Shown here in pieces: positions 20,119 through 57,812 of a stretch of DNA of 58,087 nucleotides. The DNA is from Octopus bimaculoides. Taxonomy: Eukaryota. A program made the translations under genes and the position numbers. Position 1 is the first letter of the stretch. Each line of letters starts with the position of its first letter. The stretch lies in NCBI RefSeq assembly GCF_001194135.2, contig NC_068998.1:48665095-48723181 (forward strand), given 5' to 3'. Below the pieces are notes generated by a model. That model was given only the letters and a program-made list of their open reading frames with translations. It made no database searches and was not told the origin of the DNA.

Positions 20119-20151
<33 letters not shown>

Positions 20152-29100: not shown

Positions 29101-29998
29101 CCCCTGTGAGCAATAAAGAAAAGAATATATAAATATGATATCTGGGTGTGCCTCTTTCTGCCCCAACATAGGCATATGTACGCATGGGAATGTGTACACC
29201 TTGCTCAGAGTTGCACTAAACACTAATTGAGATGTTGTAGCCTTATTTACACTGCCCTAACTTTAGTGGTTTGGCAAAAGTGACCGATACAATAAGCACC
29301 AGGCCTTAAAATAAATACCAGGATCAATTGTTCAGCTAAACCCTTCCTAAACCCTTCAAGGCAGGGCTCCAGTATGGCCACAGTCTAGAGAATGAAACGA
29401 GTAAAAGATGAAAGATATTACTCACAGGTCGAAAATCATTTATGTAAAGCTCTGCCTTCAGGAATGTCTTCAGGTCGTTGATGTTACTTAATGTGGCACT
29501 CATACCAATTATTTGGCAGGAATCTGTAAGAAGGGAAAAACCAACCATCAACAACAATATTTAGCAGATGACAAACGACAACAGCAAAATTTCTTTCAAC
29601 TAGAAGCATTCAAATCATTTTCCTACTTTAGATGTTTTTGCAAACAACTTGCACATGCAAGTGCTACCAGTCGAGAACTCCACATACCGGAAGCCAGCAA
29701 GTGTAGGGGGTCATCAAGAGAGAATGTGCGCTGTTTCAGGGCCTACCTCTCGATGGCATCATTGCGCACAGGTTCCTCTCACTGATATGAGGCCCCACTT
29801 GCTAGATCAACTGGTTATCAAATAAAGCTCAATAGAGATGCAGGAGTGACTGTGTGGTAAGTAGCTTGCTTACCAACCATGTGGTTCTGAGTTCAGTCCC
29901 ACTGCGTGGCGCCTTGGACAAGTGTCTTCTACTATAGCCTCGGGCCGACCAAAGCCTTGTGAGTGGATTTGGTAGACAGAAACTGAAAGAAGCCTGTC

Positions 29999-30036
<38 letters not shown>

Positions 30037-33000: not shown

Positions 33001-33088
33001 CTCGAGCCGACCAAAGCCTTGTGAGTGGATTTGGTAGACGGAAACTGAAAGAAGCCCATCGTATATATATATATATATATATATTATA

Positions 33089-33166
<78 letters not shown>

Positions 33167-35488: not shown

Positions 35489-36089
35489 AGCAGTCCCTAT
35501 CAAGGGTGCATGAACTAACAGCAGGCTGACAGATCTGAAATAAGTTGTGCACATATATTAGCTAAACATACAAAACAAATGGGATACAATGCAATGTTTG
35601 CAGTAAACTCTATCGAAAACTGTTTTGAGTTCAAATCCCATCAGAGGTGACTTCACGTTTCCTCACTGCACCCATCTGGAAAAGTAACTGCAACTTACAG
35701 ACTAGTTTCTTTGAGATTTGCCTCTAAACTTTCATACTGTACCGATCCCTCCTGTCTGAACTTGGATTCATGGACAGGCTAACATTACGCAACATGGTAA
35801 CATAAACCTATAAGAATTGGATGAGATATGATGGCTCGGCCGTCTCTCCCCAGTTCTTATATTAATCATTAAAATTCAGAAATACAACAACACGAGGGAT
35901 AACGGTAACAACAGATCAATAGTTTATTCTAGGTTGGTGTAGAGCCGTTTCGTTCCTGGGTAAATAGGCATGCCACTAGAATACCAAAGGAAGCTTCGAC
36001 CACATGTCGGTATCGAGCTGAGAGAATACGTGTTGTCACCACCGCTGCTGGAGAGAAAAGAGATCGGACGCTATAGCTTTCTCTCCACC

Positions 36090-39050: not shown

Positions 39051-40316
39051 TTCTATACTCCAACTCACTTGAGAGGCTCTTGTCTTGCAAGTTACTTGGG
39101 GACTTCCCTAATACAGGTACCATAAAAAAAAGCACCCAGTACATGCTGTAAACTGGTAGATGTTAGGAAGTATATCAAGCTGTAGAAACCACACCAAAGC
39201 ACGACGTTGGAACTTGGCACAGTCCTCTGGTTCTTTGTTTCCTGTCGATCCATCCAACTCAAACTGGAATGGAAAAAGGGATGTTAACTTACGGTGATAC
39301 ACACACACATTCTTTTATTCTTTTATTTGTTTCAGTCATTTGACTGCGGCCATGCTGGAGCACCGCCTTTAGTCGAACAAATCGACCCCAGAACTTATTC
39401 TTTGTAGGCCTAATACTTATTCTATCGGTCTCTTTTGCCAAACCGTTAAGTTACAGGGACGTAAACACACCAGCATCGGTTGTCAAGCGATGGGGAGGGG
39501 ACAAACACAGATGCACAAATGCACACAGACACACACATATATATATATATATATATGACGGGCTTCTTTCAGTTTCCGTCAGCCAAATCCATTCACAAGG
39601 CTTTGGTTGGTCTGAGGCTATAGTAGAAGACACTTGCCCAAGTTGCCATGCAGTGGGACTGAACCTGGAACCACGTAGTTGGGAAGCAAGCTACTTAACA
39701 CACAGCCACTCATATGCCTATACATAATATACACATGCATTGTGTGCGTGTGTGTTGATAAGTGACAAAAGAACAGGTGTTACATAATCACTCTCATTAG
39801 CTTACAGCTGTTTCTGCTGTGAGAAATATTGCATGCTTATAGCTTTCTTAAAGCCATTTGAAAAGCCATTTATAGTGCAAAGCAATTAGATGCATAGAGT
39901 TGGTTACATACAGAACAATATATTTAATGATATAATGATGCAGTTTGAGGGTGAAAAGCCTGTCCAGAGATACACACACATATATATATTTATATAATTG
40001 AGATTCAGTTGAATTAAGTACAAAGCACAAAGTCAGTCCAGTATTACTGCACAAACACACACATACACACACACACATGAATATACATAAATACATGCAA
40101 ATAGATAATACATACACATAGATAGACATGTACTTATACAGATGTACATCTATGATTTTTTTCAAAGAATCTATATTAAAATATAAAAAAAATAAACAAC
40201 TTTTTTTTTTATTTTATTTTTAAAATTTTTATTTGAGTTGGTTTTGTTCTTTCAGGAACAAACTAATTTCTTAACTTGTTCTGTCTTGGGACCATACCAC
40301 TAAACATTCCAACACA

Positions 40317-43021
40317 ATGTCAGAGAGGTCTAATAGAAGGCGAAAACTTCCACAGTGGATGCTGTCTTTGGTCAGTTCCAATACTGAAACTACAAGAGAT
40401 TCTGATAATAATCAGTTTGATGCCAATTGTGATGTTGAGTCAGAAGATAATGACATAGAAGAGCTCTCTAAGTATTGGTTTATCTTTTATTAAATATTTT
40501 TGGTTATCTCTAATCCTATGCCTGTCCAAAGCATTTTCATAAGTTTGTCTTAAATGTTCATATTTAAATGTCATGTATGACCTATAGACACTAGGAAAAT
40601 CTGTTTTGTATATCACATGTAATACTAAGGACAGACAAAGAGTTAATAACTCGTCAAACATAAAGATTCAAAGTTTTACAAAACAATTTAGCATGTACAT
40701 TATTTACATTATTTACATTTGACAGATATTTGTCCTCATCTTGTTTGTTGTTAACACGTTTCGACTGATACACCCTCCAGCCTTCATCAGGTGTCTTGGG
40801 AAAATTTCGAACGTGAGTTCTCATTCCTAAGGTATTTTTCAGTGTTGTTATTATTATTATTATTATTATTATTGTTATTATAATTCAAGTTATTGCCTAG
40901 AATCGAACACAGAATCTTGGGGTTAGTAGACCCTGCTATTAACCACTGCGCCATATGCCCGTGGGCACCTGATGAAGGCTGGAGGGTATATCAGCCAAGA
41001 CGTTGTGTTAACAGCAAACAAGATGAGGACAAATATCCGTCAAACATAAATAATGTATATAATGTACATAATTCCTCATCTCTTAAATATAGAACTAAAT
41101 TAGCATGTATTAGCACATGGTTGGGAAGCAAGCTTCTTAACTTCAATGCCTTGTCTGCACCAAATTTTGCCGAATTACAGTCACCATAATTAATTGGTTA
41201 CTTGCTGCCTTATTGCATTATTTTTGAGATAATGATTGTACATTATTAAGAAATGTAGTTGGTTTATCATATTTCCAACAGCCTTGACCGAGCCAATACA
41301 GTAATGTATATGATGAGTGAACAAGAGCTGCTACATATTGCCATGAAAACACTTCATACGGTAAGACTAAAGTTGCATATGATGCTTGTCCTAATTCAGC
41401 ATGAATCACCATTTCCACCACTAATGAGGGTTGGACAATCCCCACATTATCTCACCACTCATTTCCCATTGGTCACATTATTATTATTATTGGTGAGCTG
41501 GCAGAATCGTTAGCACGCCAGGCAAAATGTTTAACTGCATTTCGCTCGTCTTCACTTTTTGAGTTCAAATTCCGCCGAGGTCGACTTTGCCTTTCATCCT
41601 TTCGGGGTCGATTAAATAAGTACCCGTTACGCACTGGGGTCGATGTAATCGACTGAAACCCTTTGTCTGTCCTTGTTTAGCCCCCTGTGGGCAATAAAGA
41701 AATAAGTTGTTCATAGTTGATAATCCAGCCTGAGAGTCTAACAACAGTTAGAGAAAATCTTCCATTTCTAACCCTAAATTCCATAAGCCTTCATATATTT
41801 GACCAACAGTGCTACATAATAGTGCTACATGTACCCTGAATGCAGAGGATATGAAGACTGGAAAGGAAGCTGGTTGTACAATGCCAGTGTGCATGTGCAA
41901 CAAAGTGCAAATGTGTTGGGAGAAAAATTTAGCAGAACACGAAAAGCTGGTGGCATGCCAAAACACACCCAGTACTCTCTGTGAAGTGGCTGGTTTTAGG
42001 AAGGGCGTCCAACCATAGAAACCATGCCAAAGATAATACTGAAGCTCAACCCAGCTTGCCGGTCCTGTCAAACCGTCTGACCCATGCCAGCATGAAAAAC
42101 ATGTTAAATAATGAAATAAGCAACAGATATATGCAAGGTAAAATACTGTGCTGGTATGGTTATGTGATGCATACGGATAGACTCCTGCGTAACAAGGTGC
42201 CTGATGATATGTATTTTTGTTGGTCTTTTTATGTGTGTGTGTGTGTGTGTGTAAAAGCACCCATTACACATTACACTCTCAGAGTGGTTGGCATTAGGAA
42301 GGGCATCCAGCTGCTGAAAATTATGCCAAATCACACTGGAGTCTGGTGCAGCATGCCAGCATAGACAACAAACGTTAAATGATGATGATGATGATGTGTG
42401 TACGCATGAATTTTAATTGCATATATTATCCTTAGTTCTTTCCTATTTTTGATTTGATTTTAGGAAAATGAAGATCTTCGCTCTGATGAAACACTCACCA
42501 CAAAACCTACAAAAATATGTTTCAGAAACAAAACTCTTGTTAACTTTCAATCATCCAGTCATTGGAACCAAGTAAATTCTGTTGCTATTAATGATAACAG
42601 CATTGATGATAATGACAGTGAAGACAACCAAAGAAGGGTTGATACGAGGCGTCCTCACATGAAAATCGAATCTCATAAGAAAATTAATGATTCTGTTAAA
42701 AACAAGAAATTAAAAACAAAGACACCAAAGACTTCTGTAAATATTCATCAAATAAGGAAAGATACTGAACCAGTTCCTCCAGATACATTGTCTGGTCACA
42801 GCCATCAAAAAACCACAGGTACAATATTGACTAATCGAGATATTGAGACAGATCAGATGGCAACAAACAAAGACATTCATATTAATAACAAACAGTGGAC
42901 AGATGAAAATATTCAAAAGGATAAAAATGGCTCCACTTTACCCTTCACTATATTCAGCTCCAGAGAAACAATCTCTCGTCAAAAACCCGATCTGTCAATT
43001 TTAGATGAAATATTTTTGTAA
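40317..43021 (+). CDS. CYREN: CYREN/MRI (C7orf49)-like NHEJ regulator, 3 coding exons, 263 aa
   Basis: Exons 40317-40471, 41282-41360 and 42464-43021 with GT-AG junctions and matching phases (2, 0). Protein MSERSNRRRKLPQWM... (R-x-L-P-x-W Ku-binding motif), NTVMYMMSEQELLHIAMKTL (aligns ungapped with human TRTVYCMNEAEIVDVALGIL as I recall it), C-terminus PDLSILDEIFL* (human VLKYVREIFFS*). Confidence 0.78.
40694..41098. mobile_element. Family D inverted dimer (full minus element 40694-40965 plus plus-strand hammerhead/3' part)
   Basis: Minus-strand tRNA-like head (TGGCGCAGTGG...GTTCGATTC) abuts CACCTGATGAAGG; both hammerheads carry core mutations. Confidence 0.8.
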
Positions 43022-43140
43022 TAAATTTGAAAATCTGATTAAATTTTCTTCTTTCCTTTTAACTGATTTTACATCCAGTTTTCCTTTTCTTCATTTTTCT
43101 GTGAGATGGATGAGCCAATCTAATCTATTTATATATATAT

Positions 43141-44161
43141 AATATAATATAGGATAAAATCTTTATAAGAATTTATCAAGTAGTCAGCGTGAAAAAAACC
43201 CCATAAGGAAAAAAACTCATCGTCTTTTTCCCATAAATATATAATTTATATAAGGGCATTAACTATATAGTTATGCCTCACGCTTAGAGGGACTAAAAAA
43301 GTAAAAAAACTACCAAAAAATAAGCAACATATTTATTGAAAGCGAGGGAATGCAACTTTCAAAAATTAATCTCCTAAAAACATTTAACTTAATGGCAAAT
43401 CACTGGTTTCTCAATTAGTACAGCAACAACTGTGAAGTAAGCTGCATCTTTTGTTCATCAGTACACGTATGGTCGAGACATATAAAAAATAAACAAAAAT
43501 CAACATACCACGATGTGCCCAACAATAGTACGATGACTTCTGTTCATTATATATCCATGAAAGAGGTTAGAATTTATCCGGTTGCATCTCAGTAACACGT
43601 GCTTATACAGAATAATATTCAGCACTGAATATATTCTAATTATTTATAATATAATATAGGATAAAATCTTTATAAGAATTTATAAAGTAGTCAGCGTGAA
43701 AAAACCCCATAAGGAAAAAAACTCCATGCTGACTACTTGATAAATTCTTATAAAGATTTTATCCTATATTATATTATAAATAATTAGAATATATTCAGTG
43801 CTGAATATTATTCTGTATAAGCACGTATTACTGAGATGCAACCGGATAAATTCTAACCTCTTTCATGGATATATAATGATGAACAGAAGTCATCGTGGTA
43901 TGTTGATTTTTGTTTATTTTTTATATGTCTCGACCATACGTGTACTGATAAACAAAAGATGCAGCTTACTTCACAGTTTTTGCTGTATTAATTGAGAAAC
44001 CAGTGGTTTGCCGTTAAGTTAAATGTTTTTAGGAGATTAATTTTTTAAAGTTGCATTCCCTCGCTTTCGGTAAATATGTTGCTTATTCTTTGGTAGTTTT
44101 TGACTTTCTTAGTCCCTCTAAGCGTGAGGCATTACTATATAGTTAATGCCCTTATATAAAT

Positions 44162-44164
<3 letters not shown>
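43141..44164. repeat. Large imperfect palindrome with a 507-bp-period direct repeat
   Basis: Arms 43241-43698 and 43725-44164, 26-nt spacer. 43141-43218 is repeated at 43648-43724. Confidence 0.9.
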
Positions 44165-44201
<37 letters not shown>

Positions 44202-45140
44202 TGTATATATATACACACACATGTAGAGCAAAAGTCTAAGGTCCTGGTAGGGTGTAAAGTAAGGGGGTTTCCTGAGAAGCACTCAACTCAAATACAGAGC
44301 ACTGTTGGGTTCCAGACCAATACCAGAATTCTTCAGGTGTAGAAATTCCAAGTTTTATGACAATCACACCGTAAAGTGGATTTGGCAAAGAGTAATTAAT
44401 CCAAATAATAATAATAACAAGACAAAGAAAATTCTTCAACACAACTTTAATGATTCGTTACAATTGTTTCTGTACCAACTCTATTCACAACGCCAGTTTA
44501 CACAAATATTCAAAGCAAAAATTTACATAAAGTTTGTGGTTTTAAACATTAGAGAAGCATTTCATCAGACTTGCAACACACAAATGCACATCATCATCAT
44601 CATCATCATCATCGTTTAACGTCCGCTTTCCATGCTAGCATGGGTTGGACGATTTGACTGAGGACTGGTGAAACCGGATGGCAACACCAGGCTCCATCCA
44701 TATTTATATATATATATATATATANNNNNNNNNNNNNNNNNNNNNNNNNNNNNNNNNNNNNNNNNNNNNNNNNNNNNNNNNNNNNNNNNNNNNNNNNNNN
44801 NNNNNNNNNNNNNNNNNNNNNNNNNNNNNNNNNNNNNNNNNNNNNNNNNNNNNNNNNNNNNNNNNNNNNNNNNNNNNNNNNNNNNNNNNNNNNNNNNNNN
44901 NNNNNNNNNNNNNNNNNNNNNNNNNNNNNNNNNTGTTACCCAAATTTACTCAACGTATTGTTTGGCTCCAAGCTATCACAGAAGACACTTGTCCAAGGTG
45001 CAGTGCAACAGGACTGAATCTGAAATCACGACTGTAAGGCAAGTTTCTTAACCACACAGCCATCACTAATAAACTTCTTATAATTAGTTTGTTGTTGTCC
45101 AATAAACTTCAATTTGCAAGAGAAGGGTTTCTTCCACACT

Positions 45141-46388
45141 TCAGTTTAAGGGCTTCCCTCCAGAATGTATTCGTTCATGTCTTTTTAAAAGAGTGCTTGT
45201 GATAAATGATTTCTCACAGATGTCACAGTGATAGGGCTTCTCTCCAGTGTGAATCAGTTTGTGTCTGTTTAAATCGCTATTATTGACAAAGGATTTCCCA
45301 CAAACTTCACAAGGACAGGGTTTTTCCCCGGTGTGTCTACGTTTGTGACTTACAAGATCAGAATTCCGATTGAAGGATTTGCCACACATCTCACAAAGAT
45401 AAGACTTTTCTCCTGTATGTATCTGCTTGTGGACGACGAGAGTTGAATTTTTACAGAATGCATTGCCACATATATCACAGCGATATGGCTTTTCTCCCGT
45501 ATGTATTTGCGTGTGGCGTTTTAAATCATGATTTTTAAGGAAAGCTTTCCCACATATTTCACAAGGATACGGCTTCACTCCGGTGTGTATTTTTTTGTGC
45601 GTATTCAAGTGGCCATTGGTGAGAAAGGCTTTTCCACATACCTCACAACAGTAAGGTTTCTCACCAGAGTGCATCAGTACGTGTATTGTAAGTTGTGAAT
45701 TCACATAGAACGACTTGCCGCATATCTCACAGTGATAAGGTTTTTCTCCAGTGTGAACTCGCTCATGACTTTTTAAATCACTACTATTCACAAAAGTCTT
45801 CCCACACAGTTCACAGTGATAGGGCTGTTCTCCTGTATGTCTACGTATGTGAATTGTAAGCTTGGAATTTTCAATGAAAGACTTACCACATATTTCGCAA
45901 TGAAATGGGTTTTCTCCTGTGTGTATTCGTTTATGTCTTGTTAAATTACTACTATCAACAAAAGATTTTCCACAAACTCCACAATGATATGGCTTCTCTC
46001 CTGTGTGACTACGTATATGGATAACAAGAGCCGAATTATTAAGAAAAGATTTTCCACAAATTTCACAGTGAAATTGTTTTTCTCCTGTATGTATTCTCAT
46101 GTGATTCGTTAAAACACTGTTATACACAAAAGACTTTCCACATATATCACAGTGGTACGGTTTCTTCTTATTGTGTATTTCTTGGTGTGTGAAAAATTCA
46201 CGTTCTGAAGAGAACGTTTTCTTGCAATTCTCACACTTATATTCCGGAATTTTTCTTTCCACTGAACTTTGATTCGTGAACGTTTTAGTAAGTAAAACTT
46301 TCTCTCCGCTGCATGTCTGTGTAATTGAACCTATACCGTTGAAAACAGGTGTCTCGTTACGAGACTCCAAGTAATTCACATCTTCCAT
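45141..46388 (-). CDS. C2H2 zinc-finger protein, 13 tandem fingers, 415 aa, single coding exon
   Basis: 13 CxxC-x12-HxxxH repeats with TGEKP-type linkers; short N-terminus without a recognisable effector domain; splice acceptor at 46585-46587 upstream of the ATG. Confidence 0.92.
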   Translation of the reverse strand: MEDVNYLESRNETPVFNGIGSITQTCSGEKVLLTKTFTNQSSVERKIPEYKCENCKKTFSSEREFFTHQEIHNKKKPYHCDICGKSFVYNSVLTNHMRIHTGEKQFHCEICGKSFLNNSALVIHIRSHTGEKPYHCGVCGKSFVDSSNLTRHKRIHTGENPFHCEICGKSFIENSKLTIHIRRHTGEQPYHCELCGKTFVNSSDLKSHERVHTGEKPYHCEICGKSFYVNSQLTIHVLMHSGEKPYCCEVCGKAFLTNGHLNTHKKIHTGVKPYPCEICGKAFLKNHDLKRHTQIHTGEKPYRCDICGNAFCKNSTLVVHKQIHTGEKSYLCEMCGKSFNRNSDLVSHKRRHTGEKPCPCEVCGKSFVNNSDLNRHKLIHTGEKPYHCDICEKSFITSTLLKRHERIHSGGKPLN

Positions 46389-47931
46389 ATTAATTCTAAT
46401 GGAATTCTTAGAAACTGAGAGATGTCAACGAGCGTAATCTGGATCAGCTTCCTCGTCTTGGTATCACAGAATTGCGTTTACATGTCTAGAAATGCTTGTG
46501 AGTGACTTGGTCCTTTCCAAGTAGCACAAGTATTGTAGACCAAAATATTGCGATTTCTTGGTTTAAAATTGTGGTTATTGTTAACTGTGGAGTAAAATAA
46601 AATATTTTGTCTATAGTGTGCACAATCATGTGAAATGCGTGTGTGTGTGTGAGTTTTTGTTTCTTTTTTTTGACTGTTTAAAACCGACGACTAAGAGAGA
46701 CAGGCCAGTTTACACACAAACTCCATATATATAGTCTTGTAGTCCTAATAAATGAGGGTTATTCACAACGTATGGTAGAAAAGTGTACAATGAGTGGATG
46801 ATCACAATTCAGCAATATTCTGGATTTCAACTTGAAGGCTGTTGAAGCAGTTTTGTCCATGTTCAGCAAATTCGTGCGAAACCAATTCACGGTGTGATGT
46901 AATCTGGGGAGAAACTAAATATATAAGTAATGGAACATCGACCGAAAAACATGTTATCCACAAACATTAAACCTCAACATGAGACAATCATAATACATGT
47001 TACAGTCTAAATAAATTAGCAGTTAAATACAGATAAAAGGCGGTGCTCCAGCATGGCCACAGTCAAACGACTGAAACAAGTAAAAGAGTAGATGCTCTAT
47101 AGGCGGTGCCATTTAGAATTTTCCCCACTAGAATGACACCGGTGGCATATGCTACATGTCCCTGTTAAAATTTATTGCATTCAGAAACACTTCGTTATTT
47201 AAATTTCTTCTATTACAATCATCTGCCTGTGTAAATCAAAAGCGTGACCGAGCAAAATAACTCTTGCATATCTACATGATCGTTTGACCCGTAAGAAATA
47301 GTTGTCAAACACCCTTCGAACCAGAAGCTATGTGAACTTATTCGATAGACGAGTGTTTGGTGGGGACAAAATGTAATAAATTAAATATTATTTTTAAAAG
47401 TATGGATAGCAAAACGACCCATTTTTGGTAATTTAGAGGTATTTAATTAAGAACAACGTTAGGAAAAACATAAATCGTAAGATGAATCGCTGTTTGAGTC
47501 TGCAGTAATACAATTATCTTAAGTAACAATGAAACAAGTAATGATTCTTTCGTTTCGCTATTTCAGGAAAACATGATGTGTTTATACAATCTCAATTTCT
47601 GCTGGACAGGTCGCGATTCTCTGTATTTACCGACATTTCTTACTTAAATTAACTCAATTCAAAAACTAAACACATCTACGATTATTTCAAAGTTTCCGCT
47701 GGAGATATTTTAGAAAGGGGATAGACGTCTTCTTTGACATAAAGTTAAATATACATTACAATGTAGAAATGCATGATAGTCAAAATAAATTTCGAATAAG
47801 ACGTAAGTATTTCGTTTCGGTTATTCTGTATAGCCAAATTATTTTTGTATATTCCCCATTATTGTTGGTTTCATTTTAATTGACGCCGCTTTTTGCCAGG
47901 ATTACCATTTTTCTTTTAAATTTTTAGCATC

Positions 47932-50900
47932 ATGTCACCACGCGGGAGGCGATTGAGCCCCAAAACTTTATGCACCGATATCGTTGACGATGAAAGAATT
48001 ATTCGCGAGTCCTGGACATTTTGTGATCTCGTTCAACATATTTCGACAAATGATAAGGCAATTGCCTGGTTGGCGAAATATAAGCTTATAAGCAATTCTG
48101 TTACATGTCCAGCTTGTGGGAACCCGTGTACAATCATCGGCTATAAGCAAGGAATTGACGGAAAACGATGGAGATGCCCAAATCATAATTTCTCTCGATC
48201 GATTCGTAAAGGATCCGTTTTCGAGAACAGTCGTCTCTCGTTGACAACATTTACATGGCTTATGTATATGTGGTCGAGGGATTATCTGCTTTTCGAAATG
48301 GGCCATGAGACAAACGTTTGTATGAAGTCGATTATCGATCTGATCCGACTGGTCCGAGAATTATTAGAACGGTTCCTAGAAGATCATCCGGCTGAATTAG
48401 GTGATGTCCCACCCGAGATTGGAGGGTTCGATTTAGAGACAGGTGAACCAAAAATCGTTGAAATAGATGTAACTAAATTTGTTAAATCTAAACGTAATGA
48501 AAAGAAACATGCGAAAGAATTTTGGATTTTTGGTGGAATCGAACGGGGAACTGAGAAATGCTTTCTAGTACCTATTGAGTATCAAAATAAAGAAGCTTTC
48601 GAAGCTGCAATTATCCGATGGATTTTACCAGGTATGGTTTATAAAATCCGGTTTCTCTTTTATTTGTATCATCTTCAATCTGCTTTTAAATTTAGTTTCG
48701 CTGGGACCATTCTTTACCCCATCCCCTCTAATCACGCCTGTCGTTCTTTAGTTTTAACGCCAATGGCTCGTTAGAATTTGTGGTGTGTTAAACTTAAAGG
48801 AAGTTAGTATCATTAAAGCGAATGGTCATCTCTGGCGGATTGGTACTAAGTATCAACGCGCCTTCTAAGATACAAACTTCTTGTTTTAAAGATATCTAAA
48901 TTCTTCCATCAAAATTTCTTGTTAATTTATGTTCCTTACATCAGCTTAATAATGTCAAGTTTTTTGCTGAATATGTTATTTTCGAAATTATTTAAAGCAA
49001 AGGAAATTTATTTCCACATAAATAACAAGAGGATTTTTAGCATAAGTACAGATTAGTGCCACAGCTTTTCGTATAACTTTCTGAAAAGGGCAATTTTTTT
49101 AATGAAACTCTGTAGAAGTATGTTTGGGAGGGTATAGATTACAATTGTGTTCACATGAAACGAGATATATACATGTATGAGTGTGTATATATATATATGT
49201 GTGTGTGTGTGGCAGGCTTCTTTCAGTGACTGTTTATCAAATCCACTCCCAAGGCTTTGTCAGAGCTGTACAAGCCATGTACAGTGGTGTTGTCAGTAGG
49301 GTGCGCATCAGCCATGAGTACAGTGATGAATTTAGTGTACAGGTAGGGGTTCACCAGGACTCAGTTCTCACTCCACTCTTATTCGTCATAGTCCCCCAGG
49401 CCATAACAGAGGAACTCAAAACTGGATGCCCATGCGAACTACTATATGCTGAGGACCTTGCGCTTATTGGAGAAGATATTCCAGGTATGGAAGTAAAACC
49501 TGGAATCAAAGGACTTTAAAGTTAAGCTTCCAAAGACCAAAGTTGTTAACAAGTAAGAAGATAAGAACTCTTTCCGTTAGGTAAACGGCCCTGCTCAATA
49601 TGTAGGAAAGGAGTTGAAAGTAATTCCATTCGCTGCATCCAGTGTAAGCAGGTAGATTAACAAATAAGGTCATCTTTGTATGTGGCAGATGTGCAGGAAC
49701 AATAAGCACGAAGAGCACACAGGAATTAGAGTCTCTCAAATGCCCAAGAGGCTCTCTTGAGGTTGTAGATAGTTTCTCTTACCTAGGTGACCAAATTAGC
49801 AATGATGGAGGGTGTTCTGAAGGTATTGTTTCTAGAATAAGAATAGGATGGAGGAAGTTCAGAGAGCTATTACCTCCGTTGACAACAAAAGGACTCTGAG
49901 AGTGAAAGGTAGATTGTATGATACTTGTGTACAAACAGCTGTACTTTATAATAGTAAGACATGGGCTCTGAATGTAGAAGATATGCGTAGACTAGAGAGG
50001 AATAAAGGTAGTATGTATTGATGGATGTGCAACATCAGTGTGCTTGAACGACAAAGTGCAGATGTGTTGAGAGAAAAGTTGGGCATGCAAGAGAGAAGAC
50101 TATGTTGGTTTGGACATGTGATGCATATGAATGAAGATAACTGTATAAAGAAATATGCCTATCACTGAAAGTGGGTGGCACCTGTGGAGGAGAGAAGCCC
50201 TGGAAGACATGGGATGAAGTGGTGAGGACCAATCTCAGGATGTTGGGCCTCACAGAGGAGATGACGATGGAGTGAAATGTCTGACGAGATGAGGTTCTGG
50301 AGAAGACCCACCCACTTCAACGAAACTGAGTTCTAGTCTCCGTTTTTAGGCCATCATATGTAATTTGAGAGAGATTCGGCTGCTAAATTTAACAGGTCAA
50401 GAGGCCAAGTAGTGGCCTTCTCATTTATTTACATACATATACTCTCACTGTGCGTGTCCACAATATGTCTTAGTTAAAGGACTGACTTGAGAAAACCTGG
50501 AATGTTCCGTCCATTCTGAGAAACTGTTAAGTTTATATTAAATTTCTAAGTTACCTCCCTTGGTACGAATTTATCCTCAGCAAACCGAACACTTTATTTG
50601 AAATATTTTGCCTCTTTTTTTTTTTTTTTACCCCCCAAAGAACCAACTCTGGAACTACTTTCCTGCCCATTATACTTTTTTCAACAGTCGTCACCTTTCA
50701 ACAAATTCAAGCTGAAAGTCAATCACATTGACTTCCAGTGTTTCAGGCTACAGGAGAAATTTTATGGTTAGACATGGAATCAATGAAAACCAATATTAAA
50801 GAAATGACTAAAATTGACTGCGATTGCTGTGTGATAGAAATATATTTTTTATGATATTGAATCATTTTGCTAAAATAACACTTACGCTAACTTCAATATA

Positions 50901-51457
50901 GCCATGCTGAAGGCATATAGCCTAGTGGTTTGCGTGCTGCATTCATGATTGCTTGATCATGGTTTCAATTCTCTTCTGGGTGGTGCATTGTGTAGTGAGT
51001 GTTAATAGCCAAGTTTATGAACAAGATTTGATTATTTTTTTAATCAGAATCCATTTTCATTTTTGAGTTCTTGGAAAATGTAGGAATGACACAAACCTTC
51101 ACTTCACGTCCTCTATAAATATAAAGGTTCACGACAGCTTTTTTTTTTTTTTTTTTTTTTTTTTGTCTTGTAGGTACCCACATTGTGTCTGATATTTGGG
51201 CAGAATATCTGGAAATTGATCAAATCCAACAAGGCATATATACTCATGAATTAATAGATTATGATTCAGAAGACACAGAAATCCACACCAGAAATATAGA
51301 CAAGTTGTGGATAAGATTAAAAAAACAATTTCAAAGAAAACATATTAAATTTCTATTTCAGTCTTTCTTAACGGAATTTACATGGAGGGCTCACTTTAAA
51401 AATACTGACAAATTTGCTGCTCTAATCTATTGTATAAAACACTTGTATAAAGTTTAA
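47932..51457 (+). CDS. Merlin/IS1595 (ISXO2-like) transposase-derived protein, 2 coding exons, 327 aa
   Basis: Exons 47932-48631 and 51174-51457, phase-1 GT-AG intron, no internal stops. Merlin motifs: CPACG..DGKRWRC..SIRKGSVFE, VEIDVTKF, WIFGGIER, ILPGTHIVSDIWAEY, HTRNIDKLW. Confidence 0.85.
49262..50325 (+). pseudogene. Degenerate RTE LINE 3' portion inside the intron of the Merlin-derived gene
   Basis: VGVHQDSVLTPLLFVIV...ELLYAEDLALI (decayed YADD), later RIRIGWRKFRELLP and LCWFGHVM with frameshifts. Confidence 0.8.
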
Positions 51458-51496
51458 TAAAGTTCTTGTTTTATTTTTACTTGTAATTACTTTTAA

Positions 51497-51715
51497 CCCA
51501 TATATACCCCTGGTTGCGTTTTTGCAACGCAAAACCTACTCCTACTTGTTTGGACATAAACTCGCCAGGAAGCACCAGATGTTCGGTAGGGAGTCGACAC
51601 CCGTAGCTAACAGTTGTTATTGTCCTTCTCTTCCAGATTGTAAAAGCTTACCATAACGTTTAATCTAAATACAGTGAAATTTTAAGGCTTCATTTTTTTT
51701 ATGAGCACATATGGG
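51497..51715. mobile_element. piggyBac-like MITE, 219 bp
   Basis: TTAA|CCCATAT ... ATATGGG|TTAA: TTAA target duplication and CCC-start TIR; no coding sequence. Confidence 0.6.
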
Positions 51716-52469
51716 TTAATTGTAGTTAAGTATCGAGTCTCAGGTCACTTGTGAGATCTCTGATGAGTGCTACATGTAACATGGGATCCAGTACAATCTG
51801 CTACATGATCAACTCACTGGCAACTTAACTGGTGTGTATGCATGTGATTAGGGACCACATGTGAACTTGTATCCTCACTCATAGGTTGGAGATAACTCAA
51901 CCCACCCCAGGTGAATGCCACCACAAGTACAAGCAAGTTGAACCTCAGAAGCAATTTACCCACTGCATGGTACCTTGGGCAAGTGTCTTCTGCTGTAGCC
52001 CCAGACCATCCAAAACCTTGTGACAGAAACTGAAAGAAGCCCACAATTTTTTTTTTTTTTTTTTTTGAAGGGTAGACACGTTTATGGGTGATATGCTGTA
52101 CTCTGTCCCTGAATGCAGGGGTCGATGTCCCATAATGCAATGAAGCAGTTCTGTAGGTGTTGATGCTGAAATTCCAGTGAAGGAGCCTTGGATCTAGGTT
52201 AGAAACCGGCTCTTCGAGAAGCTAAAATGCAAGTGGTGATATTACTGTTTGTAGTTGGGCTGCAACTAATAAAATTTGTTGATATTTCCTGTCACCAATT
52301 TCTCCTCTTTAATCTGCATTTTCAAATTCGACTGGAATCAAAATCTCTTTATTTTGAAAGCAGGTTAGCCTTGGTGACAGGAAGAGCATCTGGCTATGAA
52401 AATCCTGCCTCTAGTACCTCCCTGTCTAACCTTTACTAGCAGGAGAAAAGGTTAAACAAATGCACAAGG

Positions 52470-52620: not shown

Positions 52621-54160
52621 CATTTATATGTAAATAAGAAACTTGTAAATTTTAAATTAAAATTTAAAAACTATACTGTATTTTGGTGAGTAGTATTTTC
52701 TAGACTGTCCAGTTAATCTTTTTTCAAGATTGATTCACCACTGAAAAACTATTTCACATTTCTAAAATTCATTACAAAATATTGTTTAATAAAAATTGTT
52801 TCTAGACATAACTTTTAATGTATCTCCTTTGTTATCCTCTGGGACAACACGATTTCTGTTTTGTCCGCTAGGACCGTGAGACATACTTACAAGCCTTCTT
52901 AGATATTTCTTTGTTGCGAGGAAGAGGAAAAAGGGAAAGATATGATGAAACAGGCAGGGCCCTTCATCAAATTTAGAAAACTATTTCATTAAGAGACATC
53001 CACAAATCTAAAATTAATGGCTGCCACATCTTTAAGCAAATAAGCAGAGTATCCATTAGCTTACAGTGTCACAGGTAAATATAACATTTGATAGGCTTTT
53101 GGTTGTAAATCATAAAACACGTTGAATCCATATTTATTCTAAGCTATAGAAGTAAATGAATTACAATGATAAATAAAAGATATGTTCATCACTGTCAATC
53201 TTTGGTGAGGAGAACAACTACTGTAGCCATTTTATCTGCTTTTTTTTAATTTTCAACCAACTTTATATTATCATTATGTTACCTGAAACAAACAGCTGCA
53301 GCCATTTTATTGTCATAACAATAAGTGGAAATGTTATAAATCACCTCTCTCCTTCTCTTGCTTTTCTCTCTGACCAGGTAACCAAGTATCTCCTTTTCAT
53401 CAGCACACCTGGTAGACGAAAACTGAAAGAAGCCTGTCGTATATATGTATATGTATATATATATGTGTGTGTGTCGGTGTTCTCTCCACCCCCCATCCCC
53501 CCAACATTCCATGACAACCGATGCTGGTGTGTTCATGTCCCCGTAACTTAGCGGTCCGGCAAAAGAGAACCAATAGAATAAGTACTGGGCTTACAAAGAA
53601 TAAGTCCTGGGGTCGATTTGCCTGACTAAAGGCGGTGCTCCAGCATGGCCGCAGTCAAATGACTGAAACAAGTAAAAGAGTAAAGAGTAAAGGTGTTACA
53701 CAGTGGAACTGAACTCGAAACTACATGGTTGGAAAGCTAGCTTCTTAATAGCACAGCCATGCCTGCACCCATACATACTGAATAAAATATTGCCAGAGAT
53801 AAAAAGAGAGGATGGTTAGAGTTTCATTTCTAGTTACATGATATTTATTTGCAAAACAGCAAAATTTGTTCCACATGTGGACTACATTTGAAAAAAATTT
53901 GATCTGCATGAAAGAAACTTTGAAGACTCTTCTAAGGTTTTTCTAAAAGTACTGAAATACAGTCAAACGATAGCTTTTACTAAAAGCACCCACTACACTC
54001 TTGGAGTGGTTGGCGTTAGGAAGGGCCTCCAGCTGTAGAAACCCTGCCAGATCAGATTAAGCCTGGTGCAGCCTTCTGGCTCACCAGTCCTCAGTCAAAC
54101 CGTCCAACCCATGCCAGCATGGAAAACAGACGTTAAACAATGATGATATATATATGTATG

Positions 54161-54207
<47 letters not shown>

Positions 54208-57200
54208 NNNNNNNNNNNNNNNNNNNNNNNNNNNNNNNNNNNNNNNNNNNNNNNNNNNNNNNNNNNNNNNNNNNNNNNNNNNNNNNNNNNNNNNNNNNNN
54301 NNNNNNNNNNNNNNNNNNNNNNNNNNNNNNNNNNNNNNNNNNNNNNNNNNNNNNNNNNNNNNNNNNNNNNNNNNNNNNNNNNATATATATATATATATGT
54401 ATGTTGGTATATATATATGTATATATATATATATGTATGTATATCAATAGATACATACGTACATGTATACATAAACAGACGGACAGACAGATAGATAGAT
54501 ACGTGGTGGGTGTTGACTCATCAGACAAGTAAGACCATTGATGACAAGTTAACTTGTTTTGTCAGTGACCATGACAAAATGGATTTTTAAAGCCAGAATA
54601 TGACTTGCATTTTTCTTGTAGCAAAAATGTAATATTCATAATCATGAGTTGCAATTAGTAACTCATTCTGCATAGCACCTTGATTGTTTACTTTTGTGCA
54701 CCTTGTGAGTCAAGATTGGCTGGAAAATACCCTGCCACAGTAGATCACATGTCAGCTAGAACATAGATAGAAAGATTGAAAGATAGATAGATAGTGAAAC
54801 AAATCAACCCCAGGACTTATTCTCTGTAAGCCTAGTACTTATTCTATCGGTCTTTTTGCTGAACTGGTAAGTTACAGGGACATAAACACACCAACATCGG
54901 TTGTCAAGCGATGGTGGGGGACAAACACAGATACACAAATACATACTACACACACACACACACACATATACACAACAGGCTTCTTTCAATTTTCCATCTC
55001 CCAAATCCACTCACAAGGCTTTAGTCAGCCCAGGGCTACAGTAGACAATACTTGACCAAGGTGCCACACAGTGGGACTGAACCCAGAACCATGTTGTTGG
55101 GAAGCAAGCTTCTTACCATACAGCCACTCTTGGACTGTGACTGACACCACTGTTGCATAACCAGCCCATTTAAAATTAGCCTTGAACCTCTGGGCAACAT
55201 GTTGTGCTTGAGAAGACCTGTTCAGTCAAGTGAAGTCATAATAGTGGCTGATGCCAGTGCCACCTGACTGGCACTCGTATTGGTGGCACGTAAAAAGCAC
55301 CATTGAAGCATGGGCCAATGCCAGTGCTGCCTGACTGGCTTCCATGTTGGTGGCACATAAATAGCACCCACTACGTGTAAGGAAGGGCATCCAGCTGTAG
55401 AAACCTCGTCAGATCAGATTGGAGTCTGGTGCAGCCGACTGGCATACTAGTCCTCACTCAAACCGTCCAACCCATGCCAGCATGGAAAATGGATGTTAAA
55501 CAATGATGATGATATATATTTATTCAGTGTTGTAATCTTTATTTTTAGAGTCTACCTTTACAATATATACATCATCATCATCATCATCATCATCATACAT
55601 GCCTATATATTTATATGTGTGTTTGTGTGTGTGAGTGAAAGAAAGACATTTCTTACAGAAATTGAGATTCTCTGAAGAATGAAATAATCCGGCACACCCA
55701 CTCTTAAAATGAATTCTGAACCGGATTACAAAAAAAGAAAAAAAACAGAGAGTTACCAATACATTCCCATTTGTTTATTTTCTGATAATATTGTATAAAA
55801 TGAGGTGTCAAAATATTTCATCACTGATGTAAAAACTGTTCACTAACTTCCCTCTCATTGTATCTCTGGTTTTGGTTCTGGAAGTGTGTCAACAGCCAGG
55901 CTGTAGGAAGATGATGAAATTTTCTCATGTTTTATCAAATACAGTCCATAAAGGAAAAACTGTTACACCTGACATTAAGTGTGTGGTGTCCATGGTCAAC
56001 ATGAATCTTGCATAATGCAAGCATAGTGTGTGTATACTCATCTATATCTATGGTGCAGCTTCCTAGGGCTAAATAGCAGCAGTATGATTCCCTTATTGGG
56101 ACTGTCACATTGAGTTGACAGTGTACAACTGCTGTATATATATATATATATATATATCCTTTTATTGGTTTCAGTCATTTGACTACGGCCATGCTGGAGC
56201 ACCACCTTCAGTCGAACAAATTAACCCCAGAACTTATTCTATGTAAGCCTAGTACTTATTCTGTTGGTCGCTTTTGCTGAACCGCTAAGTTATGGGAATG
56301 TAAACAAACCAACATCAGTTGTCAAGTGGTGGTGGTGGTAGTGGGGAGAAACACACACACATAAATATATATATCATCATCATCATATATATCCGGCAAG
56401 CCAAGTAAGATCGTTGCCAGTGCCCCTGGACTGGTTCTTGTGCGGGTGGCACATGAGATGCACCATTTTGAGCGTGGCCGTTGCCAGTACCGCCTGACTG
56501 GCTCCTGTAGGATTTTCGAGCGAGATCGTTGCCAGTGCCCCTGGACTGGCTTGTGCGGGTGGCACATAAAAGACACCATTTCGAGCGTGGCCGTTTTCGT
56601 GCGGGTGACACGTAAAAGCACCCACTACACTCTCTGAGTGGTTGGCGTTAGGAAGGGCATCCAGCTGTAGAANNNNNNNNNNTTTTCGAGCGAGATCGTT
56701 GCCAGTGCCCCTGGACTGGCTTGTGCGGGTGGCACATAAAAGACACCATTTCGAGCGTGGCCGTTTTCGTGCGGGTGACACGTAAAAGCACCCACTACAC
56801 TCTCTGAGTGGTTGGCGTTAGGAAGGGCATCCAGCTGTAGAAACTCTGCCAAATTAGATTGGAGCCTGGTGTTGCCATCCGGTTTCACCAGTCCTCAGTC
56901 AAATCGTCCAACCCATGCTAGCATGGAAAGCGGACGTTAAACGATGATGATGATGATGATATATACATGATGATATATATGGATATATATGATGGTCTTC
57001 TTTCAGTTTCTGTTTACCAAATCCACTCACAAGGTTTTGGTCGGCCCTAGGCTATAGTAGAAGACACTTGCCCAAGGTGCCACCTAGTGAGACTGAACCT
57101 GGAACCATGTGGTTGGGAAGCAAGCTACTTACCACACGGCCATGCCTGCACCTATGTATATATCTATATTTATATTTATGTTTTATTCTATCTTTTGTTT

Positions 57201-57444
57201 TCAGTCATTTCACTGTGGCCATGCTGGGACATCTACCTTGAAGAATCTTTAGTTGAACGAATCGACCCCAGCACTTGGTATCCTTTTAAGTCTGGTATTT
57301 ATTTTGTCAGTTTCTTTTGCTGAAATGATGATGTATGGGGACAAACAGACGTAAAGACACCCATACACATACACACATATATCCATACCAACATGGGGAA
57401 TGGACGTTAAATGATGATGCATACATACATACATACATAGAATG

Positions 57445-57812
57445 GTGGAATGTGGTTGTCCAGGAATAGGAGCAGTTTCCACTGATGTCCGACCACATCT
57501 GAACTGGTGGTGCCAGCGCTTGACTGCATTGTATGCTGGTGCATCGTCACAATAAATTTCTTTCATCTCATCGATTGTCTCTTTTGCTGTATGACCTTTC
57601 AAGTATAAGAACTTGATCACCGATCTGCATTCAACTGCCTCCATTATAACACTTTAGTACACTTCATCAGCCATAAAAGACAAACGAATGCTAGAGGGAA
57701 GCTGTAATTTACAATGTGACATATAAAGAAATGTATGGTTATACCTGTACAAGTTCCGTTTTCTGCAATAACCAGAAGTGGGTCAGGGGAAAACTTTAAT
57801 GAACACCCCTCG
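57445..57812 (-). pseudogene. Mariner element 5' part (TIR plus HTH), truncated
   Basis: TIR TACGAGGGGTGTTCATTAAAGTTTT at ~57812; ORF MEAVECRSVIKFLYLKG...AVKRWHHQFRCGRTSVETAPIPGQP is the mariner HTH region. Confidence 0.8.

What the first reader, a model, noticed from the sequence alone, without database searches (positions are those of the whole stretch)
47932..51457. Probably domesticated Merlin/IS1595 transposase gene
The 327-aa ORF is intact while every other transposon here is riddled with stops. It is split by a 2.5-kb intron that has itself accumulated an old RTE insertion, has a predicted 5'-UTR intron, and shows no TIRs that I can find. The first two catalytic Asp are kept (VEID, VSD), but EIDE became EIDV, the conserved VNH became IDY, and the third catalytic Glu (HTxxIE) appears to be Asp (HTRNIDKLW). 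This fits a host gene under purifying selection with lost or altered transposase activity. Merlin domestication is rarely reported.
Basis: partly seen in the sequence, partly recalled or inferred. Interest (0 to 1): 0.7.

Follow-up and report, generated by a model that had tools for sequence, protein, structure and literature searches.

The report
Octopus gene family from Merlin transposase
This is an intact, intron-containing octopus gene that descends from a Merlin/IS1595 "jumping gene" enzyme but now behaves as an ordinary conserved host gene, one of eight such paralogs kept in three octopus species, which appears to be an undescribed case of transposase domestication in an animal.

Summary
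Exons 47932-48631 and 51174-51457 (GT..AG, phase 1) give a 327-aa protein. It is identical to RefSeq XP_014782303.1 (LOC106877799, Octopus bimaculoides, uncharacterized) and passes the Pfam DDE_Tnp_IS1595 threshold.

The domestication reading is strongly supported.
- The O. sinensis ortholog lies in a collinear locus with the same C2H2 zinc-finger neighbour and the same intronic repeat.
- dN/dS is 0.065 (27 synonymous and 7 non-synonymous codon differences). The CDS diverges 3.6% against 8.3% for intron and flanks.
- No TIRs were found, whereas the same test finds 29-bp GG-TIRs around an intronless Hydra relative.
- The nearest paralog is only 79% identical.

The gene belongs to a monophyletic family of eight paralog lineages. 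Seven of them have an ortholog in at least one other Octopus species, partly in conserved tandem clusters. All six lineages with DNA share the intron position.

The clade has D-D-D instead of D-D-E. Three lineages lost a triad residue. The two of them I could test remain under purifying selection, so the conserved role probably does not need catalysis.

Two details are not supported. The proposed 5'-UTR acceptor is not conserved, and the RTE class of the intronic repeat could not be verified. Function is inferred, not shown.

The parts
47932..48631 (+). Exon 1 CDS (aa 1-233 plus the first base of codon 234). It encodes the N-terminal helix-turn-helix, the zinc ribbon (C59, C62, C82, H85), a second helical DNA-binding module and the first half of the RNase H-like core, including D179 (48466-48468).
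   Evidence: sequence and splice join. (exact match to XP_014782303.1). (AF2 model, pLDDT 87). (alignment).
48632..51173 (+). Intron of 2542 nt, GT..AG, phase 1, between ILP and G(234). All six paralog lineages with DNA (A, B, C, D1, F, G) have an intron at this same codon, with lengths of 2.5 to 9.3 kb.
   Evidence: same donor and acceptor codon in lineages A, B, C, D1, F and G. (alignable with the O. sinensis intron).
49184..50542 (+). Interspersed repeat inside the intron. It carries a reverse-transcriptase-like motif seen by eye only (..QDSVLTPLLF..LLYAEDLAL..) and many stops. It is shared with O. sinensis at the orthologous position, so it is older than the species split.
   Evidence: 86% identity to L005 11390-12753. 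(copies in other loci). (no Pfam RT hit, so the RTE class is unverified). (stops in all frames).
51174..51457 (+). Exon 2 CDS (rest of codon 234 to aa 327, plus the stop). It holds the second half of the RNase H-like core with D240 (51191-51193), D276 (51299-51301, the canonical Glu position), K283, and the clade-invariant C-terminal tail DKFAALIYCIKHLYKV.
46389..47931 (.). A 1.5-kb spacer between this gene and the divergently oriented 415-aa C2H2 zinc-finger ORF (45141-46388, minus strand). It is a possible shared promoter region; this is inference only.
   Evidence: ORF. (12 C2H2 fingers). (same head-to-head arrangement in O. sinensis). (88-92% identity, no more conserved than the intron).

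Best explanation
LOC106877799 is a host gene derived from a Merlin/IS1595-type DDE transposase. It is not a mobile element.

Inferred history:
- An ancestral element was immobilised in an octopod ancestor and lost its terminal inverted repeats.
- It acquired an intron at codon 234, or kept one already present.
- It changed its active site. The third residue went from E to D, the DE after the first Asp became DV, and four residues before the third residue were deleted.
- It was then duplicated by ordinary gene duplication into at least eight paralog lineages, partly in tandem arrays. The duplications are several-fold older than the O. bimaculoides / O. sinensis split.

What is shown: the origin, the orthology, the synteny, the purifying selection, the absence of TIRs and the fold prediction.

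What is inferred: the product is most likely a nuclear DNA-binding protein. It would use the retained transposase DNA-binding module (helix-turn-helix, CxxC..CxxH zinc ribbon, second helical domain) and keep the RNase H-like core as a structural or interaction scaffold. DNA cleavage is probably not the conserved function, because three paralog lineages lost one triad residue (G: D1 to G; F: D2 to G; E: third residue to N or S), and lineages G and F remain constrained between species (E was not tested).

My estimates are about 0.9 that it is a domesticated host gene, about 0.5 that its role is non-catalytic DNA binding or regulation, and about 0.25 that the D-D-D members still cut DNA.
For: **Identity and origin**
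- Pfam DDE_Tnp_IS1595 is above threshold.
- Canonical relatives are 33-42% identical and carry D-D-E plus a zinc ribbon.
- The AF2 model has pLDDT 87 and pTM 0.85. D179 is on strand 1, D240 is at the end of strand 4, and D276 is on the helix at 273-288.
- The best PDB fold matches are retroviral integrase N-terminal domain plus core.

**Host-gene behaviour**
- The protein matches an annotated single-copy gene exactly.
- The O. sinensis locus L005 is collinear with window 40118-52041. It includes the 415-aa ZNF neighbour and the intronic repeat.
- Ortholog dN/dS: A 0.065, C 0.139, G 0.114, F 0.235. All are below neutrality, with p from 4e-11 to 2e-3.
- The CDS is 3.6% diverged against 8.3% for non-coding DNA.
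- Paralog dN/dS is 0.12-0.25, with dS from 0.46 to above 1.5.
- Similarity to paralog loci is confined to the CDS, about 160 nt of intron and about 40 nt after the stop.

**Family structure**
- There are eight lineages. Seven have an ortholog in a second Octopus species; lineage B is intact only in O. bimaculoides.
- The order G<->C->B->DHHC is conserved in both species.
- The F and G loci are collinear between species.
- The intron codon is the same in all six lineages with DNA.

**No TIRs**
- None were found in six octopus loci. The same test finds a 29-bp GG-initiated TIR pair around the intronless 1.7-kb Hydra relative, whose 90% cluster has copies on six chromosomes.

**Triad losses**
- They are present in both species for lineages F and G.
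Against: - **No expression data were available.** The RefSeq model is a prediction, and the splice junction is supported only by conservation and by the identical annotated protein.
- **No functional data exist.** DNA binding and nuclear localisation are inferred from domain ancestry and an AF2 model.
- **The window gene keeps an acidic triad (D-D-D) and the K at +7.** From my own knowledge of ISfinder, bacterial IS1595 members tolerate N, E or H at the third position. Catalysis in lineage A is therefore not excluded.
- **Phylogenetic depth is modest.** It covers three Octopus species plus unidentified Logan contigs. Squid, cuttlefish and nautilus could not be searched.
- **One lineage (B) is a pseudogene in O. 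sinensis**. Individual members are therefore dispensable.
Confidence: 0.85

Rival explanations
1. It is a domesticated but still catalytic nuclease or recombinase. On this view the D-D-D members (lineages A, B, C, D1, D2) cut or rearrange host DNA. The triad-defective paralogs (E, F, G) would act as non-catalytic partners, as in the ciliate PiggyMac/PiggyMac-like system or as RAG-like co-option.
For: - Five of the eight lineages keep three acidic residues and K283 at the canonical structural positions.
- The most conserved segments among paralogs lie in the RNase H-like core: aa 153-262 at 77-84% mean identity, against 59-69% for the DNA-binding part.
- Intact-triad and broken-triad paralogs coexist under selection.
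- DDD triads are active in other superfamilies such as mariner and piggyBac (own knowledge).
Against: - The whole clade carries E to D at the third position, the loss of the nearly invariant Glu after D1, and a 4-residue deletion just upstream of the third residue. In mariner, swapping D and E at this position abolishes activity (own knowledge).
- Paralogs lacking D1 or D2 are as constrained as the others. This is more simply explained by a shared non-catalytic role.
- No target sequences or rearranged loci are known.
Confidence: 0.25
2. It is an ordinary Merlin transposon copy, active or recently immobilised, that happens to have an intact ORF.
For: - It has a DDE_Tnp_IS1595 domain.
- O. bimaculoides is reported to have 191 proteins with this domain (PMC8101967).
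- Canonical Merlin-like proteins exist in Octopus, for example P0308.
Against: - There are no TIRs and no near-identical copies.
- The unit is 3.5 kb because a 2.5-kb intron holds an older repeat shared with another species.
- The orthologous position is conserved, with dN/dS of 0.065.
- Paralogs are arranged in conserved tandem clusters.
Confidence: 0.03
3. It is a transposase-capture gene whose main products are fusion transcripts with neighbouring C2H2 zinc-finger exons. It would then be a new transcription factor of the host-transposase-fusion type.
For: - The O. vulgaris annotation contains a 386-aa isoform (P0172). It joins the Merlin-derived part, up to ..HTRNID, to C2H2 fingers that match the ZNF gene downstream in O. 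sinensis, L005 22965-25882.
- Both flanks of the ortholog locus carry C2H2 ZNF genes.
Against: - There is only one annotated model, in one species, and I could not check transcript evidence for it.
- The stand-alone 327/328-aa product is the one conserved in all three species and in all paralogs. Its C-terminal tail, which the fusion would remove, is the most invariant part of the family.
- No downstream plus-strand ZNF lies within the window.
Confidence: 0.1

Closest known systems
Merlin superfamily / IS1595-family DDE transposases (Feschotte 2004; PMC8101967). The example examined here is the Hydra vulgaris element that RefSeq names 'male abnormal protein mab-31(-like)', locus L010.
   Same: - Same DDE_Tnp_IS1595 domain, same length (about 330 aa) and same N-terminal CxxC..CxxC-type zinc ribbon.
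- Same RNase H-like core, with the two Asp and the K at +7.
- 33-42% identity over the full length.
   Different: - The Hydra element is intronless and 1.7 kb long. It is bounded by 29-bp TIRs starting with GG, it is multicopy on six chromosomes, and it carries D-D-E.
- The octopus gene has no TIRs and a 2.5-kb intron. It is single-copy per lineage and orthologous across species, and it carries D-D-D with a clade-specific insertion (ELGDxPPEI) and deletions.
Putatively domesticated Merlin/DDE_Tnp_IS1595 genes of protists: Stentor, Perkinsela, Perkinsus (PMC8101967) and ciliate macronuclear genomes (Oxytricha PMC3558436; Blepharisma PMC9942806).
   Same: They have intact Merlin-type ORFs without TIRs or TSDs. 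They are conserved between related species and were interpreted as domesticated.
   Different: - Those are in unicellular eukaryotes, and some are linked to programmed genome editing.
- This one is in a metazoan. It has an intron, an eight-lineage family and quantified purifying selection.
- I found no report of an animal case.
C. elegans MAB-31, a nuclear factor of the Sma/Mab TGF-beta pathway (PMC2921377).
   Same: NCBI names the Hydra relatives of this family after MAB-31. That implies sequence similarity. If true, MAB-31 would be an animal precedent for a nuclear, developmental role of a Merlin-derived protein.
   Different: - This was not tested. MAB-31 itself was not retrieved by either search.
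- The 2010 paper states that it resembles no protein outside worms.
- Treat this as a lead only.
Families of domesticated transposases with catalytic and non-catalytic paralogs (Paramecium PiggyMac/PgmL; vertebrate PGBD1-5) and DNA-binding domesticates (SETMAR, CENP-B, POGZ). This comparison rests on my own knowledge.
   Same: They are multi-paralog host gene families derived from one DDE/DDD transposase. Some members keep the triad and others lose it, and all are kept by selection.
   Different: They come from different superfamilies (piggyBac, mariner, pogo). No function, partner or target is known for the octopus family.

Membership tests
Merlin superfamily transposable element | Transposase with a DDE_Tnp_IS1595 domain | tested here: met
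   Pfam PF12762 scores 39.7 bits against a gathering score of 27, E 6e-10.
Merlin superfamily transposable element | Catalytic D-D-E triad | tested here: not met
   The triad is D179, D240 and D276. The third position is Asp where 35 canonical relatives have Glu. Three paralog lineages lack one triad residue.
Merlin superfamily transposable element | Terminal inverted repeats, typically starting with GG | tested here: not met
   No TIRs were found within 3 kb of either end in the window or in five other octopus loci. The only inverted pairs are SINE fragments. The same test recovers the 29-bp GG-TIRs of the Hydra control.
Merlin superfamily transposable element | 8-9-bp target site duplications at the element ends | tested here: inconclusive
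   Without identifiable termini there is nothing to flank. Similarity among paralog loci stops at the CDS.
Merlin superfamily transposable element | Multiple dispersed copies of similar sequence | tested here: not met
   There is one copy in the window. The nearest paralog is 79% identical in protein. Each 90% cluster holds one gene per species per locus.
IS1595-family transposase (NCBIfam NF033547, equivalog domain) | Score at or above the curated cutoff | tested here: not met
   The score is 45.2 bits against a cutoff of 75. The protein is a related but divergent eukaryotic branch.
Domesticated (exapted) transposase host gene | Orthologs at syntenic positions in different species | tested here: met
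   Window 40118-52041 is collinear with O. sinensis L005 and has the same ZNF neighbour. The C/B/G cluster and the F locus are also syntenic.
Domesticated (exapted) transposase host gene | Purifying selection on the coding sequence at the fixed locus | tested here: met
   Ortholog dN/dS is 0.065, from 27 synonymous and 7 non-synonymous codon differences, p 4e-11. The CDS is 3.6% diverged against 8.3% for non-coding DNA, p 5e-8.
Domesticated (exapted) transposase host gene | Loss of the hallmarks of mobility (TIRs, recent copies) | tested here: met
Domesticated (exapted) transposase host gene | Expression and a host function or phenotype | not testable with these tools
   No RNA-seq or functional data were available. 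The only indirect evidence is annotated isoforms in O. sinensis and O. vulgaris.
MAB-31 family (C. elegans) | Significant sequence similarity to C. elegans MAB-31 | not tested
   Only the RefSeq naming of the Hydra relatives points to it. MAB-31 was not among the hits.

The most novel reading that the evidence does not exclude
The eight-lineage family could be a programmed DNA-cutting system of octopods. The D-D-D members, including this gene, would retain nuclease or recombinase activity. The triad-defective paralogs would serve as regulatory partners. The system would act on relic Merlin-type sites in somatic or neural genomes, as an animal analogue of the ciliate domesticated excisases or of RAG.
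Probability: 0.08. Interest if true: 0.9.

Novelty: new member of a known kind. Interest (0 to 1): 0.55.

Why it matters
Domesticated transposases are a recurrent source of new regulators and DNA-processing enzymes. Examples are RAG1, CENP-B, SETMAR and PiggyMac.

The Merlin/IS1595 superfamily has so far contributed almost no documented cases, and I could find none in the animal literature.

This locus offers a clean example. It has orthology across three Octopus species and quantified constraint. It has a fixed intron and an altered active site. It has expanded to eight paralogs, which form a natural series with intact and broken triads.

Cephalopods are known for lineage-specific gene-family expansions such as C2H2 zinc fingers and protocadherins. 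A Merlin-derived family sitting among zinc-finger genes is a concrete, testable candidate for lineage-specific regulation.

It also warns that part of the '191 Merlin sequences' reported for O. bimaculoides are host genes rather than transposons.

Tried and rejected
- **O. vulgaris loci.** Look-ups for P0001, P0003 and the O. sinensis isoform P0006 found nothing on record. I used the O. sinensis cluster members P0173 and P0177 instead.
- **Intronic repeat.** Pfam scans of its ORFs, and of frame translations with X at stops, gave no reverse-transcriptase hit. The RTE label stays unverified.
- **Inverted repeats.** The best pairs around the gene are 26 nt at 73% and 21 nt at 95%. They are AT-rich chance matches or oppositely oriented octopus SINE fragments, and they are not conserved in O. 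sinensis.
- **5'-UTR acceptor** at 47926-47927. I rejected it as a conserved feature because it is AA in O. sinensis.
- **C. elegans MAB-31.** Neither the single-sequence search nor the profile search returned it. My 1e-10 cutoff may have hidden it.
- **PDB by sequence.** The profile search found no solved relative. Only fold-level matches to retroviral integrases were found, with TM 0.3-0.5.
- **Synteny with paralog loci.** Synteny between the window and L001 or L002 was considered and rejected. Only the CDS and SINEs match.
- **Downstream plus-strand ZNF gene.** I looked for one in the window, as a partner for the O. vulgaris fusion isoform. It is not present within the 6.6 kb available.
Full report
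**1. The observation**

Exon 1 (47932-48631) ends ..TTACCAG|GTATGG. Exon 2 (51174-51457) begins after a long T-tract and ..TTGTAG|. Joining them gives 984 nt in frame, which is 327 aa plus a stop. The intron is 2542 nt.

The spliced protein is identical over its whole length to XP_014782303.1, 'uncharacterized protein LOC106877799 [Octopus bimaculoides]'. UniProt calls it an 'ISXO2-like transposase domain-containing protein'.

Pfam DDE_Tnp_IS1595 matches aa 186-306 at 39.7 bits against a gathering score of 27. The bacterial NCBIfam equivalog model scores 45 bits, below its cutoff of 75. tblastn finds no second copy in the window.

**2. Active-site residues**

I aligned the protein with 7 octopus relatives and 35 canonical relatives of 23-42% identity.
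- D179 (VEID) and D240 (VSD) fall in the two nearly invariant Asp columns.
- The Glu of the canonical HTQNIE motif is Asp here. It is D276, in HTRNIDKLW, and the conserved Lys follows seven residues later (K283).
- The nearly invariant Glu after the first Asp (EIDES) is Val.
- Four residues are deleted where the nearest relatives have V(V/I)HxxNF.
- There is a clade-specific insertion, ELGDxPPEI, before the GG motif.
- The zinc ribbon reads C59-x2-C62 ... C82-x2-H85. Its last ligand is His instead of Cys.

An AlphaFold2 model built from this alignment is confident (mean pLDDT 87, pTM 0.85). It shows an N-terminal helical module, a zinc-ribbon sheet and a second helical module. It then shows an RNase H-like core, with D179 on the first strand, D240 at the end of the fourth strand and D276 on the helix at 273-288.

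Foldseek against the PDB returns retroviral integrase N-terminal-plus-core fragments as best matches (E about 1e-5, TM 0.3-0.5). No solved structure is related by sequence.

**3. It is not a mobile element**

No terminal inverted repeats flank the gene. I also ran a blastn-short comparison of 3 kb upstream against the reverse complement of 3 kb downstream. In six octopus loci it found only chance 10-12-mers or oppositely oriented SINE fragments.

As a positive control I fetched a Hydra vulgaris relative, which RefSeq names 'male abnormal protein mab-31'.
- Its ORF is intronless.
- It is bounded by a 29-bp TIR pair, GGTAATGTTGCAGAATAGACACGTTAAAT, inserted in a (TA)n tract. The element is about 1.7 kb.
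- Its 90%-identity cluster has members on six different chromosomes.

The method therefore finds Merlin ends where they exist.

Similarity between the window and two paralog loci is limited to the CDS, about 160 nt at the 3' end of the intron and about 40 nt after the stop.

**4. Orthology and selection**

The O. sinensis ortholog is LOC115219899 (locus L005). It lies in a region collinear with window 40118-52041. That region includes the divergently oriented 415-aa C2H2 zinc-finger ORF (window 45141-46388, minus strand) and the repeat inside the intron. The intronic insertion therefore predates the species split.

Between the two species the CDS differs at 35 of 984 positions, or 3.6%. Intron and flanks differ at 8.3% of 3861 aligned positions (Fisher p 5e-8). 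The codon differences are 27 synonymous and 7 non-synonymous. dN is 0.0097, dS is 0.149 and dN/dS is 0.065. The binomial p against 75% non-synonymous is 4e-11.

This is constraint at a fixed locus. Selection among transposon lineages cannot produce it.

**5. A gene family, not a single gene**

Searches and cluster look-ups define eight paralog lineages, shown in the table.

| Lineage | O. bimaculoides | O. sinensis | O. vulgaris |
|---|---|---|---|
| A (this gene) | LOC106877799 | LOC115219899 | CAI9735744 |
| B | LOC106879049 | pseudogene in L006 | none found |
| C | LOC106879047 | LOC115214512 | CAI9726405 |
| G | LOC106879048 | LOC115214035 | CAI9726406 |
| F | LOC106879382 | LOC115214311 | none found |
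| D1 | LOC106868238 | LOC115219239 (X1) | CAI9732498 |
| D2 | LOC106868236 | LOC115218985 | CAI9732500 |
| E | LOC106868237 | LOC115219239 (X3) | CAI9732499 |

- **Tree.** A neighbour-joining tree makes the octopus clade monophyletic against canonical relatives. It groups sequences by lineage, not by species.
- **Divergence.** Paralogs are 59-80% identical in protein. The next relatives outside Octopus are at most 42% identical.
- **Synteny.** The order G <-> C -> B -> DHHC-gene is the same in O. bimaculoides and O. sinensis. The F and G loci are collinear between species well beyond the CDS. The consecutive locus numbers of D2, E and D1, and the read-through isoforms that join exon 1 of one paralog to exon 2 of the next (P0006, P0183), indicate a second tandem array.
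- **Intron.** All six lineages for which I obtained DNA have the intron at the same codon (ILP|G, phase 1). Intron lengths run from 2.5 to 9.3 kb.
- **Age of the duplications.** Pairwise dN/dS between paralogs is 0.12-0.25, with dS from 0.46 to above 1.5. Ortholog dS is 0.07-0.15. The duplications are therefore several-fold older than the species split.
- **Other species.** Logan contigs from unidentified further species carry exon 1 of lineage A (94% identity), lineage F (91%) and a more divergent member. All have the same donor site.
- **Turnover.** Lineage B has two in-frame stops and no start codon in O. sinensis. The family therefore shows birth-and-death turnover.

**6. What the triad pattern says**

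- Lineages A, B, C, D1 and D2 have D-D-D.
- Lineage G has Gly for the first Asp (VEVGMF), in O. bimaculoides and in O. sinensis/vulgaris.
- Lineage F has Gly for the second Asp (VSGVW), in both species.
- Lineage E has Asn or Ser at the third position.

G and F also lack the fourth zinc ligand. Even so, ortholog dN/dS is 0.114 for G and 0.235 for F, both significantly below neutrality. No ortholog DNA pair was obtained for E, so its constraint was not tested.

The simplest reading is that the family's conserved function does not need DNA cleavage. The caveat is that the most conserved segments among paralogs lie in the RNase H-like core and the C-terminal tail, DKFAALIYCIKHLYKV. The core clearly still matters, as a scaffold or as an enzyme in some members.

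**7. Mechanism (inferred)**

I favour a nuclear DNA-binding or regulatory protein. It would reuse the transposase's helix-turn-helix, zinc-ribbon and helical DNA-binding module. The core would serve for oligomerisation or partner binding.

The main rival is retained nuclease or recombinase activity in the D-D-D members, with the defective paralogs as partners. From my own knowledge, DDD triads work in mariner and piggyBac, and bacterial IS1595 members vary at the third position. Swapping D and E in mariner, however, inactivates it.

A third possibility is fusion transcripts with neighbouring C2H2 fingers. An annotated O. vulgaris isoform (P0172) suggests this. That fusion would remove the most conserved tail.

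**8. Comparison with what is known**

- Merlin elements are defined by the DDE_Tnp_IS1595 transposase, GG-initiated TIRs and 8-9-bp TSDs (PMC8101967). The octopus gene meets only the first criterion. It is Merlin-derived but is not a Merlin element.
- The same paper counts 191 such proteins in O. bimaculoides without separating host genes from transposons. It proposes domestication only for protist cases such as Stentor and Perkinsela.
- Ciliate genome papers report domesticated DDE_Tnp_IS1595 genes.
- I found no paper describing this family.
- RefSeq names the Hydra relatives after C. elegans MAB-31, a nuclear factor in the Sma/Mab pathway (PMC2921377). This is an untested lead to a possible animal precedent.

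**9. Verdict**

The finding is larger than stated, because it is an eight-lineage family with conserved clusters. It is also less unknown than stated, because the gene is already annotated, although it is uncharacterized.

Two minor claims fail or remain open. The 5'-UTR acceptor is not conserved. The RTE class of the intronic repeat is unverified.

I classify it as a new member of a known kind, the domesticated DDE transposases, from a superfamily with very few such cases. Interest is moderate to good. Function remains to be shown.

Noticed in passing
window 45141-46388 (minus strand); ortholog at L005 6508-7755: There is an intact 415-aa ORF with 12 C2H2 zinc fingers, head-to-head with the Merlin-derived gene and 1.5 kb away. 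It is conserved without indels in O. sinensis. Its dN/dS is 0.06, but its dS is 0.40. That is three to five times the dS of the neighbouring gene and well above the 8% non-coding divergence. Gene conversion among ZNF paralogs is a possible cause.
   Followed up: partly
window about 17279-35554, minus strand (ORFs 17279-17740, 19391-19747, 24519-24962, 31379-31750, 33953-34705, 35093-35554): These look like exons of a POLQ/HELQ-type helicase gene, with Pfam hits to HHH_5, POLQ_helical and Helicase_C. The window therefore carries at least three host genes.
   Followed up: partly
window 57249-57644, minus strand: This is a fragment of a mariner/Mos1-type transposase N-terminus (Pfam HTH_48, E 2e-9) that breaks off into unrelated sequence. 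It is a decayed transposon and contrasts with the intact Merlin-derived gene.
   Followed up: partly
O. vulgaris protein P0172 (CAI9735743.1); O. sinensis L005 22965-25882: An annotated 386-aa isoform joins the Merlin-derived protein, up to ..HTRNID, to C2H2 fingers of the ZNF gene about 7 kb downstream. It may be a host-transposase fusion transcript or an annotation artefact.
   Followed up: partly
L006 24830-25525 and 30149-30454 (O. sinensis CM016865.1): The O. sinensis copy of paralog lineage B has two in-frame stop codons and no start codon, while the O. bimaculoides copy (LOC106879049) is intact. RefSeq isoforms X3 and X4 of the upstream paralog splice into this pseudogene's exon 2.
   Followed up: yes
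L010 2706-4405 (Hydra vulgaris CP147930.1): This is a compact Merlin element with an intronless 334-aa ORF and 29-bp TIRs starting with GG, inserted in a (TA)n microsatellite. RefSeq labels it 'male abnormal protein mab-31', so a transposon carries a developmental-gene name.
   Followed up: yes
proteins P0017 and P0039 (Logan/other contigs, organisms unknown): Two more distant relatives also have degenerate triads. P0017 has VEIGEC and HTRNMDNLW. P0039 has VEIGVT, VTDSW and HIQNIKSLW. They may be independent domestications or decaying copies in other animals.
   Followed up: no
window 4865-4981, 6900-7366, 8388-8585, 12861-13289, 26423-26889, 27868-28032, 44725-44933, 54208-54382, 56673-56682: There are nine assembly gaps (runs of N, 2237 bases in all), mostly next to microsatellites. 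None lies inside the gene.
   Followed up: yes
window e.g. 27471-27867, 39313-39721, 33163-33403, 53410-53690, 56159-56373: An abundant SINE-like repeat of about 400 nt is present in many copies in the window and in every octopus locus fetched, at 80-93% identity. It accounts for all long inverted matches near the genes.
   Followed up: partly
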